The notes under the pieces were generated by a model, which had not been told where the DNA came from, made no database searches, and was given only the letters and a program-made list of their open reading frames with translations. A DNA stretch of 63,602 nucleotides, filler included, from Octopus bimaculoides (Eukaryota): NCBI RefSeq assembly GCF_001194135.2. It is 3 parts of 3 records of this genome, joined end to end, with 100 filler letters (N's around TTAATTAATTAA, not from the genome) between each part and the next. Parts side by side here need not be neighbours in the genome. Positions count along the whole stretch, not along the records: positions 1 to 31,724 come from NC_068989.1; 2 more parts are not named here. The stretch is one strand, 5' to 3'. The position numbers and the translations under genes are program-made. The first letter of the stretch is position 1. Each line of letters starts with the position of its first letter. Shown here one piece after another: positions 11,894 through 57,136 of the stretch.

Positions 11894-12707
11894 TGTGTGT
11901 GTACGTACGTACGTGAATGTAATTTATGCACGTCCACAAATTAGCACGCATGTCGCTCCAATTTTAGGAAGACATTCGTCAAGACCCTAGCTGTATTTTC
12001 GTCAAATTATTTTTTCCGAGGCACCCGCGGATAGCGGTAAAAATCGATTTTCAACCTTAACTTTTACCAATTTTGATGTTTGCTAACATGATTTAAGTCC
12101 CTTCTTGCCATAGCGAAGTTAAAACTCTGTCTGTGCGTGTGTGTGTATGTGTGTGAGGGAGAGAGATAAGTTGTGTTGATGTATGTGTGTGTGTGAGGGA
12201 GAGAGAGTAAGTGACAGCGTTCACCAAAAATAAAAATGTATAATGTTTTTTTTTTTTCTCACACAACAATTAAGATATATTTATTTTAAATCATTTATTC
12301 ATTTTAAATCGTTCATCTTTCTTTCCCCCGCTCTCTCTCTCACACACACACACACATTACTTTGGGCGCGAAAGAGTTTTGCTTTTATTTTACGCCGAGG
12401 AAAAAAGTCTTTTGTTGAGAATCCATTTATTTAACAACAAAGATACANNNNNNNNNNNNNNNNNNNNNNNNNNNNNNNNNNNNNNNNNNNNNNNNNNNNN
12501 NNNNNNNNNNNNNNNNNNNNNNNNNNNNNNNNNNNNNNNNNNNNNNNNNNNNNNNNNNNNNNNNNNNNNNNNNNNNNNNNNNNNNNNNNNNNNNNNNNNN
12601 NNNNNNNNNNNNNNNNNNNNNNNNNNNNNNNNNNNNNNNNNNNNNNNNNNNNNNNNNNNNNNNNNNNNNNNNNNNNNNNNNNNNNNNNNNNNNNNNNNNN
12701 NNNNNNN

Positions 12708-14010
12708 TCCTCATTGCGACAGGACTTTAACACACTCCCACCAAAGTTACTTCTGGAGTTGTCATATGACGCTGATGGCCTTGCAGAGTGCCTGAGAATA
12801 AATGAACCGAAATTGCTCCCTGATCAGAGGCTGGTGTACGAAACTGTCGTCAATGCCGTTGAAAAACAGGCGGGCGGCATTTTTTTCCTCGATGCTCCTA
12901 GAGGTACTGGCAAATCCTTTGTAACACAATTAATACTTGCTAAGATTCGTCGCGAGAAACAAATTGCGCTAGCCGTTGCTTCCTCGGGAATCGCTGCTAT
13001 GTCATTCCCTTTACATTTGGTGAGGGCCGAGGTTCCTACTTGCAACATTGGCAAAAATTCAGTGGAGGCTGAAGTTCTTAGACAGTACCGTCTCATTGTA
13101 TGGGACGAATGCACAATGACCAATAAGGGTGCCCTTGAGGCACTGAACCGGTCACTGAAAGGTATCAGGGATTCTACAGCTTCTATGGGTGGTGTAACTC
13201 TATTGCTTTCAGGAGATTTCTGGCAAACCCTTCCTTTCATCCCTAAAGGGAGACGGGCTGATGAAGTGCGTGCATGCCTTAAGTTATCCACGTTAAGACC
13301 TTAAGCCTAAGTACAAACATGCTTGCGCACTTGCTTGGTGACAGCACGCCTGCAGCATTTGCTGAAGACATTTTAGCCCTTGGAGAAGGCAAGGTCCTTA
13401 GAAATGACAGGGGCGACATATCCATCTCTGAAGTGTACTACATCGTGGAAAACCCTTCCGATCTTTTGGAAACAGTGTTCCCCAATCTGGAAAGTAACAA
13501 TGCAGACATCAATTGACTTAATGAGAGAACCATCCTAGCCCCCAAAAAACGTAGCTGTCAGTGCTATCAACGACCAGCTCATAAGCCGAATTTCAGGTGA
13601 GGAGCGCATCTACAAATCGACTGACCGGATCTCTGACCCACAAAACATTGTCAATTACCCTATCGAGTTTCTCAACTCATTGGAGCCAGCAAGGGTTCCA
13701 CCTCACATTCTTAGGCTAAGAGTTGGATGCCCATTTATGCTAATCAGAAACTTGCTTTCGCCTAAACAGTGCAAGGGGACCCGCTTAGTAATCAACGCCC
13801 CACTTGATTGAGGCCACCATTGTTACAGGGTGCGGGAGGGGTGAAAATGCTTTCATTTCAAGAATGCAGCTTTATCCCTCGGGGTCAGACATGCCGTTTT
13901 ACTTCCGCAGATCGCAGTGAGACCATGCTTCGCCATGTCCATCAACAAACTCAAAGGACCAGATCAAATGTTATATGGTACTTTGATCGATGCTCAAACG
14001 ACTATGCTAC
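12708..14010 (+). pseudogene. Helitron RepHel PIF1-type helicase domain, disrupted
   Basis: FFLDAPRGTGKSF (Walker A), IVWDECTM (Walker B), LLLSGDFWQTLP, LRVGCPFMLIRNL, FAMSINK motifs with stops and frameshifts; 5' part lost in gap. Confidence 0.92.
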
Positions 14011-15121: not shown

Positions 15122-15974
15122 ATATAGACCTATCATCAAATGCGTTTCAAGACCACAGTGTCTTTACATTCTTTTTAAAGCTGATATGGTATGATCTGAG
15201 GAAGATTTGGCTGATATTTCAAGCAGGCGGTGTGGCAGCATTAATTTTCCCTCGTTGGCTCGGGTATAAGGCCTTTGAGTCTAGACGTACAAAGATGACT
15301 TTTCATCGAATCGAGTCCTTGACGTGGTTCCCATTTGAAGCTTTAACTGCTTATGATGACATGAAGGTTATAACATCTCGTTAAACCCTTGGCTAGTAGG
15401 TTTAGTCCATTCTTTTTTTACTTCAGCACCAACACCTGGCCCCCTGAGTATCCTTAATGGAGTCCACTCTGTTGCAAGCACTTACTTGGGTTAGGTCTCC
15501 GGTTTGAGGACTCATTCTGCCCACCGATCTCACAAGCCCTGTGAATGGTCATGCACACTACTTTTTCTTCCTGACTAAATAATAAGAAAGCCCAAACCAT
15601 AGAATCTTAAACTATGGCTTTTTTTTTTCTCTTAACTCAAGACATATCGACTAGTCGAGTGAAGATTTAAGAGCTCGAATCATGTTACGATATGTTTGTA
15701 ATAAAAGAAATAATTACTTACAAAACTCTTGTTTGAATAATTCAAACTCATCTACCGTGACTGCAATAATAACAAAGAAATGCGCCGCACGTTAAGTATG
15801 GACGATGCAACGATGGAGGATCTGAGCAAAGTGTGAAAATTGCGATGTATAATGCAAAGATACAGGAAGGGAATTCATTTATTTTTCTCGTTAGTTCTGT
15901 ATAACTGCAAACCATGGCTGCTAAACGCAGAGCAACGGAGCAACGGAGCAATGTCGGCAATATAGAGTTATTGT

Positions 15975-16230
15975 AAGGCGGCGAGCTGGCAGAAGCGTTA
16001 GCACGCCGGGTGAAATGCTTAGCGGTATTTCGTTTGTCTTTACATTCTGAGTTCAAATTCCGCCGAGGTCGACNNNNNNNNNNTGTCTTTACATTCTGAG
16101 TTCAAATTCCGCCGAGGTCGACTTTGCCTTTCATCCTTTCGGGGTCGATAAATTAAGTACCATTTGCACACTGGGGTCGATCTAATCAACTGGCTTCCTC
16201 CCTAAAAATTTCGGGCCTAGTAGAAAAGAA
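15975..16230 (+). mobile_element. Full-length SINE family B
   Basis: GGCGAGCTGGCAGAA head, GAGTTCAAATTCC B box, GACTTTGCCTTTCATCCTTTCGGGGTCGATAAA core (Meta/MESC-like, inference); TSD TATAGAGTTATTGT / TATAGAATTATTGT. Confidence 0.9.
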
Positions 16231-18170: not shown

Positions 18171-18260
18171 TGTGGCGAGTTAAGAGATGTAGAGTTTACG
18201 ACTCACTGCAATAATAGATGGGTAAGAAAGGCAATAATGGAATAAAGATATTAGCAATAT

Positions 18261-18424
18261 GCGCAGGATTGGCTGTGTGGTAAGTAGCTTGCTTACCAAC
18301 CACATGGTTCCGGGTTCAGTCCCACTGCGTGGCACCTTGAGCAAGTGTCTTCTACTATAGCCTCGGGCCGACCAAACTCTTGAGTGTGGATTTGGTAGAG
18401 GGAAACTGAAAGAAGTCCGTCGTA

Positions 18425-23678: not shown

Positions 23679-24075
23679 TGTTGGGCATGAAATTAAGAGC
23701 TCAAATTTCTTTTAATAATAATTTTTCATATTTTCATATTATTTCTTATTATATTTAGTTTGGAACAATGCATGTTAAATCCGTTAACATTTCTAAACCT
23801 GCTCGGCTTCATCTGCTGAATGGAGTGCGAACGAGAGTGGTGCTTTTATAGCCACATTTTCCTTTTAGTTTTTTTTTATGTAGATACCAAGGAACATAGG
23901 GCTGAAGTATAACTATCGAACTGGAAATATGCTCAACAGATATCTCTAAGTTACCTTCAGTAACTATGTGAGTATGTGAGCTTTGCTTGTAAGAGAGTGT
24001 GTGTGCGTATGTGAGTACATCTATAAATACATTATCTACATTTGACGGATATTCGTCCTCATCGTGTTTGTTGTT

Positions 24076-24121
24076 AACACAACGTTTCGGCTGATATACC
24101 CTCCAGCCTTCGTCAGGTGTC
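24076..24121 (-). ncRNA. Minimal type-I hammerhead ribozyme motif
   Basis: GACAC-CUGACGA-A-GGCUG-loop-CAGCC-GAAA-CG-U-U-GUGUU: core, stem I, stem II and palindromic ACGU stem III. Confidence 0.7.
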
Positions 24122-24165
24122 TTGGGGAAATTTCGAACCTGGGTTCTCATTCCTATCGATGTTAC

Positions 24166-24206
<41 letters not shown>

Positions 24207-25095
24207 TATTATTATTATTAATCAGGTCGCTGCCGTGAATCGAACTCGGAATCTTGGGGTTAGTAGCGATCGTGATACCCACCACGAGGAAATGATCAAG
24301 CTCAGTAACAATCTATTAAGAAACAACTACCCCAAGAACATACTATCTACTCCAATTATGNNNNNNNNNNNNNNNNNNNNNNNNNNNNNNNNNNNNNNNN
24401 NNNNNNNNNNNNNNNNNNNNNNNNNNNNNNNNNNNNNNNNNNNNNNNNNNNNNNNNNNNNNNNNNNNNNNNNNNNNNNNNNNNNNNNNNNNNNNNNNNNN
24501 NNNNNNNNNNNNNNNNNNNNNNNNNNNNNNNNNNNNNNNNNNNNNNNNNNNNNNNNNNNNNNNNNNNNNNNNNNNNNNNNNNNNNNNNNNNNNNNNNNNN
24601 NNNNNNNNNNNNNNNNNNNNNNNNNNNNNNNNNNNNNNNNNNNNNNNNNNNNNNNNNNNNNNNNNNNNNNNNNNNNNNNNNNNNNNNNNNNNNNNNNNNN
24701 NNNNNNNNNNNNNNNNNNNNNNNNNNNNNNNNNNNNNNNNNNNNNNNNNNNNNNNNNNNNNNNNNNNNNNNNNNNNNNNNNNNNNNNNNNNNNNNNNNNN
24801 NNNNNNNNNNNNNNNNNNNNNNNNNNNNNNNNNNNNNNNNNNNNNNNNNNNNNNNNNNNNNNNNNNNNNNNNNNNNNNNNNNNNNNNNNNNNNNNNNNNN
24901 NNNNNNNNNNNNNNNNNNNNNNNNNNNNNNNNNNNNNNNNNNNNNNNNNNNNNNNNNNNNNNNNNNNNNNNNNNNNNNNNNNNNNNNNNNNNNNNNNNNN
25001 NNNNNNNNNNNTAATAATAATAATAATAATAATAATATAATAATAATAATAGTAACATCGATAGGAATGAGAACCCAGGTTCGAAATTTCCCCAA

Positions 25096-25141
25096 GACAC
25101 CTGACGAAGGCTGGTGGGTATATCAGCCGAAACGTTGTGTT
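25096..25141 (+). ncRNA. Minimal type-I hammerhead ribozyme motif
   Basis: GACAC CTGACGA A GGCTG GTGGGTATAT CAGCC GAAA CGT T GTGTT. Confidence 0.7.
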
Positions 25142-25351
25142 AACAACAAACAAGATGAGGACGAATATCCGTCAAATGTAGATAATGTAAATAATTCCTC
25201 ATCTCTTAAATATAGAACTGTATATCTATATATATTGTTGTATTTCGGGATGGTCATTATTATTTTTTTTTTTTTGCCAAATAAACAACACACGCACTAA
25301 ATATTCGTTCTTCACTCGTTTATTACTGTTCTTTTTTTAACTCGTGTCCAT

Positions 25352-25397
25352 TGTCCGCAAATCTTTCGTCCCACATTTGTGACCTCTTCAGCGACAC
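25352..25397 (-). ncRNA. Degenerate hammerhead-like motif of a second family
   Basis: GTGTCG CTGAAGA G GTCAC AAAT GTGGGAC GAAA GATTTG CGGACA; stems imperfect, cleavage site not canonical. Confidence 0.35.
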
Positions 25398-25430
25398 TTT
25401 CCGTCTTCGTGTGTGCTCCTGCTCCGCTTA

Positions 25431-25468
<38 letters not shown>

Positions 25469-25889
25469 GAGAGTTTTCATACACGTCGAGTACTGGTGTC
25501 ATTAGTTCTATGACGAAGAAAGCCGGCACTATATGCAAAAAGGTGTGTGCGTTTTAAGGGTTACTGAGGCGAAACTGTATTGAAAGATACATTGTTGAAC
25601 CTTGAAACCATTCTTCCAACAAAACATACTCACTCGTTTTAGTTCACTTGTTCTTTTCTAATTGATTGATTTGTCTGAGTCATTTGTCACAGTTCTTGTA
25701 ACTTTGTCAGTCGGTTACCCATGACTGTATTTTCTCTTCGTATGTGTGCTATATTTATATCTATTATATATGTGTTATATTGTATCTATTATAGCTATTA
25801 TATATGTGTTATGTGTTATATTTATATCTATTGTAGGCAGTGAGTGTAATTGTGTGTGTGTATATGTGTGTGTTTGCCCTGATCTTCTG

Positions 25890-25891
25890 GC

Positions 25892-25931
<40 letters not shown>

Positions 25932-26094
25932 CGAAGATGATGATGACGAAGATGATGATGACGAAGATGATGATGACGAAGATGATGATGACGAAGATGA
26001 TGATGATGATAATGAGGATGATGATGATGTGTGTGTGTGTAAGCGTTTATGATAGAGCTGTCTGGTGGTGAGCTTGTGTGTGTGTGCGTGTGTG

Positions 26095-26126
<32 letters not shown>

Positions 26127-26160
26127 CGTGTGTGTGTGCGTGTGTGTGTATGTACGTCCT
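25890..26160. repeat. (GAT)n with 15-bp higher-order unit GAAGATGATGATGAC, then (GT)n
   Basis: Direct inspection. Confidence 0.95.
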
Positions 26161-26530
26161 GGTATGATTTTAACTTCATCTTGTAGTGGGGCTCTGGTTC
26201 GGGAATTCCAAGGTTTTGAAGAGTGTGGAATCATCTCTTAGCCACTATTCTCAGGTGTACTCTGATCCGGAGTGGTAGCACTTGTCAGGCTCCCAGCTCT
26301 TTGTTAGCATATGAACTCGAGCACGCAGAAATATCCAGAAATATCCTTCGTAGGTGTCAGAGTGAGAGGACCCTGAGGTCCCCAACTGTTGACACAACAG
26401 CCATCTAGCAGAGAGACACTGGTATAAAACCTGCGGTTTCTCATGATTCCAGATAATCTTGCTTCAGCTTGTCACAAGGTACTAATGACGGAGACTCAGA
26501 GTGGTATAGGAATGCGTTAAATAGCTCAGC

Positions 26531-26563
26531 GGGCTGCGTGTTTGAATCACGTCGGGGTCACCA
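26531..26563 (-). other. tRNA-Trp primer-binding site
   Basis: Minus strand TGGTGACCCCGACGTGAT(TCAAACACGCAGCCC), complementary to the tRNA-Trp 3' end including CCA; abuts an LTR. Confidence 0.8.
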
Positions 26564-26566
26564 CTT

Positions 26567-26944
26567 TATAGGAAAGTGGGTTATACATCATTAGATGTAC
26601 ACCTGACTTTCCTATATTAAATTAGAAATGAACGGAACGCAGAACTCTAAACTGATCAACAACAACAATATTTATTTATGGTGGAAAATATACAACTTCC
26701 AATTGTCCGGTTTCTGAGTAGCCTGAATGTAGATGTACTGTCCCTAGAGATGAATCGTTGGAGAGACAACTTGCTTCTTCCACACTCAATGAGAGCTTGT
26801 TTTAGACCGTCTTGCTTGTTCGCTGTCTGGCGTGGTAAGAGACAGAATTAAGCGGGAACACTTGGACGTTGAAATCCACGCATGTGTGGTTAAAGATGGA
26901 GTAATGGCGACTATGCCTTTTTGGCGCCATATGACGTCACTACA
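26567..26944 (-). mobile_element. LTR (Gypsy-like), ~378 bp; internal region absent
   Basis: Minus strand starts TGTAGTGACG and ends ...CTATA (mutated CTACA), contains AATAAA, followed by the PBS. Confidence 0.7.
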
Positions 26945-27100
26945 GTGGTATTCGTGTTATACAAACGTTTATCACTATAATTCAATAATGCTCAGATGTC
27001 TTTTTATAGTGACCTCATTTGTTACCCACATCTACTGAAAGTCCTATGGTGATAGCAAAATGGTGACATGTGCAGATCTAACTAGTTAGATGTACACAGC

Positions 27101-27550
27101 ACTACCTCCTCCAGGCATTTGATGTAGGCCTCCGTGGATGAAGAGGGTGGCTGTTGGAAGACTTTGAGTCTGGCAACAGGACTCTGCAGTATGCCACACT
27201 AGCGGGGGAAACCAATCATGTATGTCAGACAATTTCTGCGACCACATCACCCCTAACATCTGGCCACGTAACTCCCCAGACTGCATCCCCCTTGATTATT
27301 GTGTGGGGCGCAGTTGAGCGAGAAACCAACACAACCCCTTGTAACACCAAAGATGAACTGAAGGCAAGAATTATGGCAGTATTCACCAACTTAAACAAGG
27401 AGACCTTCCAGAAGAGTTGCAGGAGATTCCAAAGTCGTTTGGCGGCCGTGGTTGAAGCCAGTGGCGATTTTATTGAACAAGTTCATTCTTTAGTATTACA
27501 AGATATTTTAATGTAATTTTGGTAAATATATGTAAAAAATGAGATGTCAA
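27101..27550 (+). mobile_element. maT/Tc1-like transposase 3' fragment
   Basis: WQQDSA...DNFCDHITPNIWPRNSPDC.PLDY.VWGAVERETN..PCNTKDELKARIMAVF...VVEASGDFIE. Confidence 0.88.
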
Positions 27551-28247
27551 TNNNNNNNNNNNNNNNNNNNNNNNNNNNNNNNNNNNNNNNNNNNNNNNNN
27601 NNNNNNNNNNNNNNNNNNNNNNNNNNNNNNNNNNNNNNNNNNNNNNNNNNNNNNNNNNNNNNNNNNNNNNNNNNNNNNNNNNNNNNNNNNNNNNNNNNNN
27701 NNNNNNNNNNNNNNNNNNNNNNNNNNNNNNNNNNNNNNNNNNNNNNNNNNNNNNNNNNNNNNNNNNNNNNNNNNNNNNNNNNNNNNNNNNNNNNNNNNNN
27801 NNNNNNNNNNNNNNNNNNNNNNNNNNNNNNNNNNNNNNNNNNNNNNNNNNNNNNNNNNNNNNNNNNNNNNNNNNNNNNNNNNNNNNNNNNNNNNNNNNNN
27901 NNNNNNNNNNNNNNNNNNNNNNNNNNNNNNNNNNNNNNNNNNNNNNNNNNNNNNNNNNNNNNNNNNNNNNNNNNNNNNNNNNNNNNNNNNNNNNNNNNNN
28001 NNNNNNNNNNNNNNNNNNNNNNNNNNNNNNNNNNNNNNNNNNNNNNNNNNNNNNNNNNNNNNNNNNNNNNNNNNNNNNNNNNNNNNNNNNNNNNNNNNNN
28101 NNNNNNNNNNNNNNNNNNNNNNNNNNNNNNNNNNNNNNNNNNNNNNNNNNNNNNNNNNNNNNNNNNNNNNNNNNNNNNNNNNNNNNNNNNNNNNNNNNNN
28201 NNNNNNNNNNNNNNNNNNNNNNNNNNNNNNNNNNNNNNNNNNNNNNN

Positions 28248-57090: not shown

Positions 57091-57136
57091 GACACCTGAT
57101 GAAGCCTGGAGGGTATAGCAGTGGAAACGTTGTGTC
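57091..57136 (+). ncRNA. Hammerhead motif, stem II degenerate
   Basis: GACAC CTGATGA A GCCTG..CAGTG GAAA CGT T GTGTC; stem I perfect, stem II has two mismatches. Confidence 0.5.

What the first reader, a model, noticed from the sequence alone, without database searches (positions are those of the whole stretch)
24076..25141. Hammerhead ribozyme motifs in both terminal repeats
Both copies (24076-24121 minus, 25096-25141 plus) have the CUGANGA...GAAA core, a 5-bp stem II, a 5-bp stem I and a loop-less palindromic ACGU stem III. That is the architecture of minimal PLE-associated hammerheads thought to cleave as dimers. Deviations: an extra A after A9 and a GUU cleavage triplet. With a third copy at 57091 and a half copy at ~56875, this suggests an abundant self-cleaving RNA family, possibly producing retrozyme-like or circular RNAs (inference).
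Basis: partly seen in the sequence, partly recalled or inferred. Interest (0 to 1): 0.85.

Follow-up and report, generated by a model that had tools for sequence, protein, structure and literature searches.

The report
Penelope-type minimal hammerhead ribozyme pair
Two mirror-image copies of a short retroelement, inserted together in what looks like an octopus genome, each carry an intact minimal hammerhead ribozyme motif of the kind already known from Penelope-like retrotransposons, so the finding is real but ordinary.

Summary
Both copies (24076-24121 minus, 25096-25141 plus) read GACAC-CUGACGA-A-GGCUG…CAGCC-GAAA-CG-UU-GUGUU. They sit in 153-177-nt inverted arms that differ at two bases.

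The "deviations" (extra A after A9, GUU site) are standard for minimal hammerheads of Penelope-like elements (PLEs).

- **Chance:** a descriptor finds only these two sites in the piece and none in 400 Mb of random sequence.
- **Class:** the same core pattern hit at least 120 metagenome contigs. Both helices covary strongly there, and in some contigs the motif lies 53-82 nt after RT + GIY-YIG ORFs.
- **Family:** related copies occur in Octopus bimaculoides and three other sequence sources. The hammerhead is the best-conserved part of the unit.
- **Insertion:** the pair is one event. It is flanked by a 13-bp target duplication (11/13). The inverted copy lacks the 30-nt tail of the sense copy, as in relatives and as published for PLEs. 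This also supports the join across the gap.

Not shown: cleavage, a PLE ORF at this locus, or circular RNA. The inverted layout argues against processing here. Rfam misses the motif. Verdict: new member of a known kind, modest interest.

The parts
24015..24027 (.). Left target-site duplication, GTACATCTATAAA
   Evidence: It matches 25220-25232 at 11 of 13 bases and lies directly outside the left arm. Only 3 other sites on the plus strand and 1 on the minus strand of the piece match as well.
24028..24204 (-). Inverted, tail-less copy of the hammerhead-bearing unit. Its 3' end is at 24028.
   Evidence: Inverted repeat. It ends at the same unit position as the inverted copies in L009, L010 and L011.
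24076..24121 (-). Minimal type I hammerhead motif, left copy. The predicted cut is between 24081 and 24080.
   Evidence: The core is intact and helix II is 6 bp.
24167..24221 (.). (ATT)n microsatellite at the 5' side of the left copy
   Evidence: Relatives L001, L005 and L133 have an A-rich or AAT-like stretch at the same place.
24222..24360 (-). Sequence between the two copies, of unknown origin. It contains a B-box-like GAGTTCGATTC.
   Evidence: It has no similarity to the upstream parts of other family copies. ARAGORN and Rfam do not call it a tRNA.
24361..25011 (.). Assembly gap of 651 N between the two copies
   Evidence: The content is unknown. The orientation across the gap is supported by the flanking duplication.
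25012..25051 (.). (AAT)n microsatellite at the 5' side of the right copy
25014..25219 (+). Sense copy of the unit, including the terminal tail
   Evidence: Similarity to P0001 and L133 continues past the end of the inverted repeat, to about 25219.
25096..25141 (+). Minimal type I hammerhead motif, right copy. The predicted cut is between 25136 and 25137.
   Evidence: The core is intact and helix II is 8 bp with a GGUA loop.
25190..25219 (+). 30-nt 3' tail, present only on the sense copy
   Evidence: The same asymmetry is seen in L009, L010 and L011. In L134 the tail sits inverted at the other end.
25220..25232 (.). Right target-site duplication, GTATATCTATATA

Best explanation
Positions 24028-25219 are one insertion of a short retroelement of the Penelope-like (PLE) type. 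It is probably a non-autonomous derivative about 200 nt long.

**How it arose (inferred).** The insertion was made by target-primed reverse transcription, using an RT/GIY-YIG enzyme encoded elsewhere in the genome. As is typical for PLEs, the event left three marks:
- an inverted, tail-less copy (left, minus strand);
- a head-to-head sense copy carrying a 30-nt tail (right, plus strand);
- a 13-bp target-site duplication flanking the whole unit.

**What each copy carries (shown).** About 80 nt from its 3' end, each copy carries an intact minimal type I hammerhead. Helix III is reduced to the palindrome ACGU.

**How the ribozyme would work (inferred from established knowledge of this class).** Such a motif cannot close helix III alone. 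It is expected to become active only when two sense copies pair through ACGU/ACGU into a double hammerhead, either in a tandem transcript or in trans. It would then cut after GUU.

**At this locus (inferred).** The partner is antisense. A read-through transcript would therefore fold into a long hairpin rather than a ribozyme. The locus is most likely a young, inert relic of a family whose ribozyme acts on multimeric transcripts of master copies.
For: **Motif and chance.**

**Match to the published class features (PMC4209133).** All are present here: an unpaired nucleotide between A9 and G10.1, a G10.1-C11.1 pair, palindromic 15.2/16.2, helix I of 4-5 bp and a long helix II. That paper also reports pairs of such motifs 100-700 bp apart on opposite strands.

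**Class-level test.** The pattern hit at least 120 metagenome contigs.
- Helix II has 2.17 extra pairs, against 0.66±0.09 in shuffles. Helix I has 1.97, against 0.90±0.08.
- The covariation score is 0.372, against 0.151±0.012. None of 500 shuffles reached it, and slid controls stayed at or below 0.182.
- ORFs end 53-82 nt upstream of the motif in three contigs. L109 carries RVT_1 and GIY-YIG, L075 carries RVT_1, and L065 has a sub-threshold GIY-YIG match. In L089 an ORF with both domains ends about 1.5 kb upstream.

**Family-level test.** The family includes P0001 from Octopus bimaculoides, 157 cluster representatives and 2,024 proteins. In 14 DNA copies the hammerhead is the best-conserved part: 28 of 46 columns are at least 90% conserved, against 20 of 108 elsewhere (Fisher 8e-7). 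N7 is free to vary.

**Insertion architecture.**
- Target-site duplication.
- All four inverted copies stop at the same position and lack the tail.
- Inverted pairs with 88-97% complementary arms occur in L009, L010 and L011.
- In L134 a single unit is flanked by a perfect 12-bp duplication, with the tail inverted at the other end.
- This matches the description of PLE insertions in PMC8557442: an inverted 5'-truncated copy, a 30-40-bp tail at one end only, and resulting trouble for genome assemblies.

**One event.** The arms are about 99% alike, whereas other family members are only 72-81% identical to them.
Against: - No RT/GIY-YIG ORF lies in the window. None lies next to family copies in L009, L011, L134 or L135 either. 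The PLE link for this family therefore rests on motif class and insertion architecture.
- Rfam hammerhead models give no hit, even at E≤10.
- Covariation within the family alone is weak: 0.178 against 0.138, with 7 of 500 shuffles as high.
- Older copies (P0001, L001, L005, L012) carry disabling changes, partly at CpG sites.
- Nearest-neighbour energies favour an inactive extended hairpin. The monomer is at -17.9 against -15.5 kcal/mol for the hammerhead fold. The double hammerhead is at -29.3 against -35.8 for two monomers.
- Cleavage was not tested.
- The class data set was selected for an intact core, so it tests only the helices.
Confidence: 0.8

Rival explanations
1. The two copies are 5'-truncated 3' ends of a full-length autonomous PLE, not a short non-autonomous element. 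The missing interior, possibly including ORF remnants, would lie in the gap.
For: PLE insertions are usually heavily 5'-truncated and often carry an inverted truncated copy (PMC8557442). In other animals the same hammerhead class sits just after RT/GIY-YIG ORFs. The gap hides an unknown length of sequence.
Against: Similarity among the octopus-like copies stops at the same A-rich boundary, about 45-60 nt upstream of the hammerhead. In L134 a complete 358-nt unit without an ORF is bounded by a perfect target duplication. No PLE ORF lies next to any family copy examined. The estimated gap of 651 nt is far too short for a 3-kb PLE, although that length is only an estimate.
Confidence: 0.15
2. The hammerhead-like string is a chance feature of an imperfect hairpin inside a repeat (a SINE or MITE) and has no ribozyme function.
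For: The minimum-free-energy fold is a plain extended hairpin that pairs G5-G8 with C15.2-U17. Rfam gives no hit. Old copies decay within the motif. At about 3e-9 per base, a relaxed descriptor would give some chance matches in a genome of gigabase size.
Against: There were no matches in 400 Mb of random sequence. The motif has features my descriptor did not require: the bulged nucleotide, G10.1-C11.1, the CG palindrome and a long helix II. The same pattern recurs in at least 120 contigs with covarying helices and neighbouring PLE ORFs. Within the family the motif is the most conserved segment, and the free position N7 varies.
Confidence: 0.04
3. The inverted repeat is a DNA-transposon structure (a MITE or foldback element with terminal inverted repeats), or an artefact of scaffolding across the gap.
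For: The arms are 99% complementary and flank an assembly gap. The right contig, 25012-27551, is short and lies between two gaps, so a scaffolder could have mis-oriented it.
Against: The arms are asymmetric: the right copy carries a 30-nt tail that belongs to the family. Relatives occur as single copies and as direct 129-nt tandems as well as inverted pairs. The 13-bp duplication sits at the outer ends in the given orientation. The two substitutions and the different microsatellite lengths argue against a duplicated read.
Confidence: 0.03

Closest known systems
Minimal type I hammerheads (min-HHR) of Penelope-like elements (Cervera & de la Peña 2014, PMC4209133; Lünse, Weinberg & Breaker 2017)
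   Same: The shared features are the CUGANGA/GAAA core, one unpaired nucleotide after A9, the G10.1-C11.1 pair and helix III reduced to a palindrome. A short helix I, a long helix II, the GUU cut site and dispersed or opposite-strand pairs are also shared. So is the insertion architecture with an inverted copy and a one-sided tail.
   Different: No RT/GIY-YIG ORF is seen at this locus or beside the family copies I examined. The unit appears to be a short ORF-less element. Cleavage was not tested.
Animal non-LTR retrozymes (Cervera & de la Peña 2020, PMC7229834; bioRxiv 10.64898/2026.07.22.740005)
   Same: Both are short, ORF-less hammerhead-bearing repeats thought to depend on PLE enzymes. Relatives of this family form direct tandem arrays of 129 nt, three copies in L010.
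   Different: The retrozymes described there carry mostly canonical type I hammerheads, and their repeat units (220-240 bp in a coral, about 300-350 nt in others) are larger than the 129-nt unit here. Here the hammerhead is the minimal type. The window holds an inverted pair, not a tandem, and no circular RNA evidence exists.
Smα/Sjα SINE-like elements of schistosomes (Ferbeyre et al. 1998; Laha et al. 2000, as cited in PMC6765202)
   Same: Both are short, dispersed, ORF-less retroposons that carry a hammerhead. A B-box-like GGTTCGAA lies about 20 nt upstream of the motif here.
   Different: Smα carries a canonical hammerhead with a helix III loop and a promoter (PMC6765202). Here neither ARAGORN nor the Rfam tRNA model recognises a tRNA-like head.
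Rfam Hammerhead_1 (RF00163) and related hammerhead models
   Same: They share the same catalytic core and type I topology.
   Different: No match was found even at E≤10, in the window or in intact relatives. The likely reason is that helix III and its loop are absent.

Membership tests
PLE-type minimal hammerhead (min-HHR) | Catalytic core C3-U4-G5-A6-N7-G8-A9 … G12-A13-A14 with an N-U-H cleavage triplet | tested here: met
   CUGACGA … GAAA … GUU is intact in both copies.
PLE-type minimal hammerhead (min-HHR) | Type I topology: helix I open-ended, helix II closed by a loop | tested here: met
   Helix I is GACAC/GUGUU at the two ends of the motif. Helix II is a hairpin of 6 or 8 bp.
PLE-type minimal hammerhead (min-HHR) | Helix III reduced to a palindrome at 15.1-16.1, with no loop or a tiny one, allowing a dimeric double hammerhead | tested here: met
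   A-CG-U is contiguous. The double-hammerhead pairing can be drawn without a pseudoknot.
PLE-type minimal hammerhead (min-HHR) | One unpaired nucleotide between A9 and G10.1, and a G10.1-C11.1 pair | tested here: met
   An extra A at 25108, with G25109 pairing C25128. The bulge is present, by design of the search pattern, in all 117 class sequences (T 68, A 36, C 10, G 3). It is A in all 14 family copies.
PLE-type minimal hammerhead (min-HHR) | Helices I and II supported by compensatory changes among relatives | tested here: met
   At class level the covariation score is 0.372 against 0.151±0.012, reached by 0 of 500 shuffles. Within this family alone the signal is weak, 7 of 500.
PLE-type minimal hammerhead (min-HHR) | Location in the terminal repeat or 3' end of an element that encodes RT plus a GIY-YIG endonuclease | tested here: inconclusive
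   No such ORF was found in the window or beside family copies. The same motif class lies 53-82 nt after ORFs carrying RVT_1 and/or GIY-YIG in other contigs. The insertion architecture here is PLE-like.
PLE-type minimal hammerhead (min-HHR) | Site-specific self-cleavage, as a dimer | not testable with these tools
   Only thermodynamic estimates are possible, and these favour inactive folds.
Rfam hammerhead families | Covariance-model score at or above the gathering threshold | tested here: not met
   No hammerhead match at the gathering threshold or at E≤10.
Animal non-LTR retrozyme | Direct tandem repeats, each with a type I hammerhead, giving unit-length circular RNA | tested here: not met
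   The window holds one sense and one antisense copy and no tandem. Relatives have 129-nt tandems. Circular RNA cannot be tested here.
MITE or foldback DNA transposon | Equal terminal inverted repeats at both ends of every copy, with a short fixed target duplication | tested here: not met
   The arms are unequal because of the 30-nt tail. Relatives occur as single units and direct tandems. The duplications are 12-13 bp.
Smα-type tRNA-derived SINE with hammerhead | tRNA-related head with pol III A and B boxes upstream of the ribozyme | tested here: not met
   Only B-box-like strings are seen by eye. ARAGORN and the Rfam tRNA model find nothing.

The most novel reading that the evidence does not exclude
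The unit is a complete, ORF-less, PLE-dependent mobile element, about 200-360 nt long, not a broken PLE end. Its hammerhead-plus-tail module of about 150 nt is held at 72-81% identity across several distinct invertebrate genomes. This may be because the module is both the processing site and the recognition site for the PLE enzyme. Where it forms 129-nt direct tandems, it would yield retrozyme-like RNAs, possibly circles, smaller than the retrozyme units described in the papers read here, built on a minimal rather than a canonical hammerhead.
Probability: 0.3. Interest if true: 0.5.

Novelty: new member of a known kind. Interest (0 to 1): 0.3.

Why it matters
The result adds a cephalopod-type genome to the many animal genomes that carry minimal Penelope-type hammerheads.

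It also gives a clean worked example of one PLE-type insertion: an inverted tail-less copy, a sense copy with its tail, and a target duplication.

Three practical points follow.
- Rfam-based annotation misses this whole class of ribozyme motif.
- Thousands of "proteins" in public databases are just translations of this repeat. One of them is the UniProt entry A0A0L8FV75_OCTBM.
- Such inverted pairs break short-read assemblies, as here.

The biological role of these minimal hammerheads is still open (PMC7761336). This locus does not settle it.

Tried and rejected
- **Rfam.** Searches at the gathering threshold and at E≤10 found no hammerhead, in the window or in relatives. A MIR396 "hit" in L010 is only the hairpin formed by an inverted pair.
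- **tRNA origin.** ARAGORN on the window and seven loci found no tRNA. The tRNA-like look of the sequences upstream of the units therefore stays unconfirmed.
- **Other copies in the piece.** BLAST of the arms against the rest of the piece found none.
- **Antisense-frame protein search.** Nothing found.
- **First metagenome scan.** A scan with a family-specific 22-mer found nothing.
- **Look-up of P0001's contig.** Not on record.
- **Literature.** Sequence strings and accession numbers searched in papers and supplements gave nothing. Lünse et al. 2017 is not held.
- **Bacterial promoter and terminator scan.** Not informative for a eukaryote.
- **Pfam on window ORFs.** Only a PIF1 helicase fragment matched. 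There was no RT or GIY-YIG.
- **The internal 139 nt (24222-24360).** No similarity to any fetched locus.
- **MITE and assembly-artefact readings.** Both were considered and rejected, for the reasons given under rivals.
- **Source organisms.** I could not identify the organisms behind ERZ21867824, GCA_052426985.1 or SRR11869384-94.

Full report
**What is in the sequence.**

The region holds two inverted arms, 24028-24180 and 25037-25189. They are 153 nt long and 99% complementary. BLAST extends the match to 177 nt, into an ATT/AAT microsatellite. A 651-N assembly gap lies between the arms.

Each arm contains the string GACAC-CUGACGA-A-GGCUG…CAGCC-GAAA-CG-UU-GUGUU, at 25096-25141 on the plus strand and 24121-24076 on the minus strand. 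This has:
- a type I hammerhead core;
- a 5-bp helix I;
- a helix II of 8 bp (right copy) or 6 bp (left copy);
- one unpaired A after A9;
- a helix III reduced to the palindrome ACGU;
- a predicted cut after U25136, or between 24081 and 24080 on the minus strand.

The arms differ by two substitutions and by microsatellite length. They are therefore two real copies, not one read used twice.

**Chance.**

A descriptor modelled on the published one finds only these two sites in the piece. It finds none in 400 Mb of random sequence of the same composition. My analytic estimate for the relaxed descriptor is about 3e-9 per base, or about 2e-4 per piece. No other copy of the arm lies in the piece.

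**Databases of known RNAs.**

Rfam gives no hammerhead match at the gathering threshold or at E≤10. It also finds none in intact relatives. This is a real negative for membership of the Rfam families. The literature says this class is atypical and usually lacks the non-conserved nucleotides of helix III (PMC7761336), which is the likely reason.

**Comparison with the literature.**

Cervera and de la Peña (PMC4209133) describe minimal hammerheads in the terminal repeats of Penelope-like elements (PLEs) and dispersed through metazoan genomes. Four features emerged there without being part of their search:
- a conserved G10.1-C11.1 pair;
- palindromic 15.2/16.2;
- families rich in covariation.

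They also report a helix I of 4-5 bp, a long helix II, and pairs of motifs 100-700 bp apart on opposite strands. The window's motif has all the sequence features.

Craig et al. (PMC8557442) describe PLE insertions as heavily 5'-truncated. They often carry an inverted truncated copy next to the 5' end and a 30-40-bp tail at one end only. They note that such structures break short-read assemblies.

**Relatives.**

A translation of the arm found one protein, A0A0L8FV75 of Octopus bimaculoides. It is 81% identical, and the similarity runs 33 nt past the end of the inverted repeat. The end of the repeat is therefore not the end of the element.

An exhaustive profile search found 157 cluster representatives. 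A profile of these found 2,024 proteins. All are translations of the repeat: TP[DE]EG encodes ACN-CCU-GAN-GAN-GG, and PKRC encodes CCG-AAA-CGU-UGU.

DNA was fetched for copies from three other sources:
- Logan assemblies of runs SRR11869384-94;
- ENA assembly ERZ21867824;
- NCBI assembly GCA_052426985.1.

I could not name these organisms. The window shares only this family and a mariner-like repeat with the 28 kb of ENA sequence compared. The ENA genome is therefore probably not a close relative of the window's genome.

**Family-level tests.**

In an alignment of 14 DNA copies, the hammerhead is the best-conserved part. Of its 46 columns, 28 are at least 90% conserved, against 20 of 108 elsewhere (Fisher 8e-7). 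G5, A6, A13, A14 and U17 are invariant, and the free position N7 varies.

Losses at G12, C15.2 and G16.2 are mostly CpG decay. Covariation within the family alone is weak: 0.178 against 0.138, with 7 of 500 shuffles as high. It includes a C-G to G-C swap at 10.3/11.3 in L001 and C-G to U-A at 10.4/11.4 in the window.

One caveat applies. The copies were found through a profile that includes the motif, which favours its conservation somewhat.

**Class-level tests.**

The pattern CCTGANGANGG-N10-24-CCGAAACGTTG matches the window's motif exactly. The pattern fixes the core but not the helices.
- Helix II has 2.17 extra consecutive pairs, against 0.66±0.09 in shuffles. Helix I has 1.97, against 0.90±0.08.
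- On a fixed-register alignment of 110 distinct sequences, the covariation score is 0.372 against 0.151±0.012. None of 500 shuffles reached it, and slid controls stayed at or below 0.182. All four Watson-Crick pair types occur at several positions.
- Four GC-rich contigs that look like bacterial chance matches were left in, which makes the test conservative.
- In L109, L075 and L065 an ORF carrying RVT_1 and/or GIY-YIG ends 53-82 nt upstream of the motif. In L089 one ends 1.5 kb upstream.

The class is therefore a structured RNA tied to PLEs, as published.

**The insertion.**

All four inverted copies stop at the same unit position and lack the last 30-35 nt. These are the window's left copy and those in L009, L010 and L011. 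The sense copies carry that tail.

In the window, the outer ends are flanked by GTACATCTATAAA (24015-24027) and GTATATCTATATA (25220-25232), which agree at 11 of 13 bases. The right copy of this repeat starts exactly at the family-defined 3' end. Only three other sites on the plus strand and one on the minus strand of the piece match as well.

In L134, a single 358-nt ORF-less unit is flanked by a perfect 12-bp duplication, with the tail inverted at the other end. Inverted pairs with 88-97% complementary arms recur in L009, L010 and L011. L010 carries three direct 129-nt units.

The window's arms are about 99% alike, while other family members are 72-81% identical to them. The pair therefore arose in one event. 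This also answers the gap question: the two contigs belong together in this orientation, although the gap's content is unknown.

**Autonomous or not.**

Similarity among the octopus-like copies stops at a common A-rich boundary, 45-60 nt upstream of the motif. No RT/GIY-YIG ORF lies in the window or next to any family copy examined. L134 shows a complete short unit.

I therefore favour a short non-autonomous, PLE-dependent element. This fits the recent proposal that animal retrozymes derive from PLE terminal repeats (bioRxiv 10.64898/2026.07.22.740005). Truncated ends of an autonomous PLE remain possible.

**Function.**

Nothing here shows cleavage. Nearest-neighbour energies favour an extended hairpin that pairs G5-G8 with C15.2-U17. 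That fold is at -17.9 kcal/mol, against -15.5 for the hammerhead fold. The double hammerhead is at -29.3, against -35.8 for two monomers. This agrees with the low in vitro activity reported for this class (PMC4209133).

At this locus the second copy is antisense. A read-through transcript would form a hairpin of at least 177 bp rather than a dimeric ribozyme. The retrozyme or circular-RNA idea is therefore not supported here, though tandem relatives make it plausible for the family.

**Verdict.**

This is a real, intact pair of PLE-type minimal hammerhead motifs created by one retroelement insertion. It is a new member of a known kind and of modest interest.

Noticed in passing
window 12714-13304 (+): ORF fragment matching the PIF1-like helicase family (PF05970, E 2.9e-39). 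It starts right after the assembly gap at 12448-12707 and is probably a Helitron-type remnant.
   Followed up: partly
window 27154-27516 (+) and L011 17572-17838: A 120-aa ORF that looks by eye like the C-terminal part of a mariner/Tc1 transposase. Pfam gives no hit. The DNA is 75% identical to a stretch of the ENA contig, so it is a repeat shared between the two genomes.
   Followed up: partly
window 7202-8584 (+): Several adjacent ORFs that look by eye like a decayed LINE (end of an endonuclease and start of an RT). Pfam found nothing.
   Followed up: partly
window 1780-1990, 2650-3000, 15900-16073, 18250-18420: Several SINE-like repeats with B-box-like strings (GGTTCGAA, GGTTCAGTCC, GAGTTCAAATTCC). 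Together with frequent microsatellites and six internal assembly gaps, and the single named relative, the piece looks like an octopus draft genome. ARAGORN calls none of them a tRNA.
   Followed up: no
window 25067-25300 (+), 23809-24285 (-); P0001: The open reading frames across the arms are spurious. UniProt A0A0L8FV75_OCTBM ("uncharacterized protein") and about 2,000 other predicted proteins in public collections are translations of this repeat.
   Followed up: yes
window 25073-25095 and 24226-24300 (-); L134 9870-9960; L010 190-290 (-): A B-box-like GGTTCGAA lies about 20 nt upstream of the hammerhead. T-arm-like strings lie further upstream in several copies, hinting at a tRNA-derived head as in Smα elements. 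Neither ARAGORN nor the Rfam tRNA model supports this.
   Followed up: partly
L010 301-690; P0002, P0003: Relatives form direct tandem arrays with a 129-nt period (three copies, 91% matches), each unit holding one minimal hammerhead. The unit runs from cut site to cut site.
   Followed up: partly
L134 9814-10195: A single 358-nt unit flanked by a perfect 12-bp target duplication, AATATGATTATT. The family's 33-nt tail is present in inverted orientation at the 5' end (29 of 33 bases match).
   Followed up: yes
L010 125-337: Rfam reports a MIR396 match (38 bits, below the gathering score of 80). It is only the hairpin formed by the inverted pair of units, a likely source of false microRNA calls in such genomes.
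   Followed up: yes
L013-L132 (JGI metagenome contigs): Many "metagenome" contigs carry animal PLE sequences with minimal hammerheads, that is, host DNA. From their record-name series I take many of them to be termite-gut, coral and gutless-worm samples, but no tool confirmed the sources. About four hits (L072, L083, L102, L121) look like chance matches inside GC-rich bacterial genes.
   Followed up: partly
window 25253-25276: A run of about 15 T lies roughly 35 nt downstream of the element's 3' end. I did not test whether it has any role, for example as a pol III terminator.
   Followed up: no
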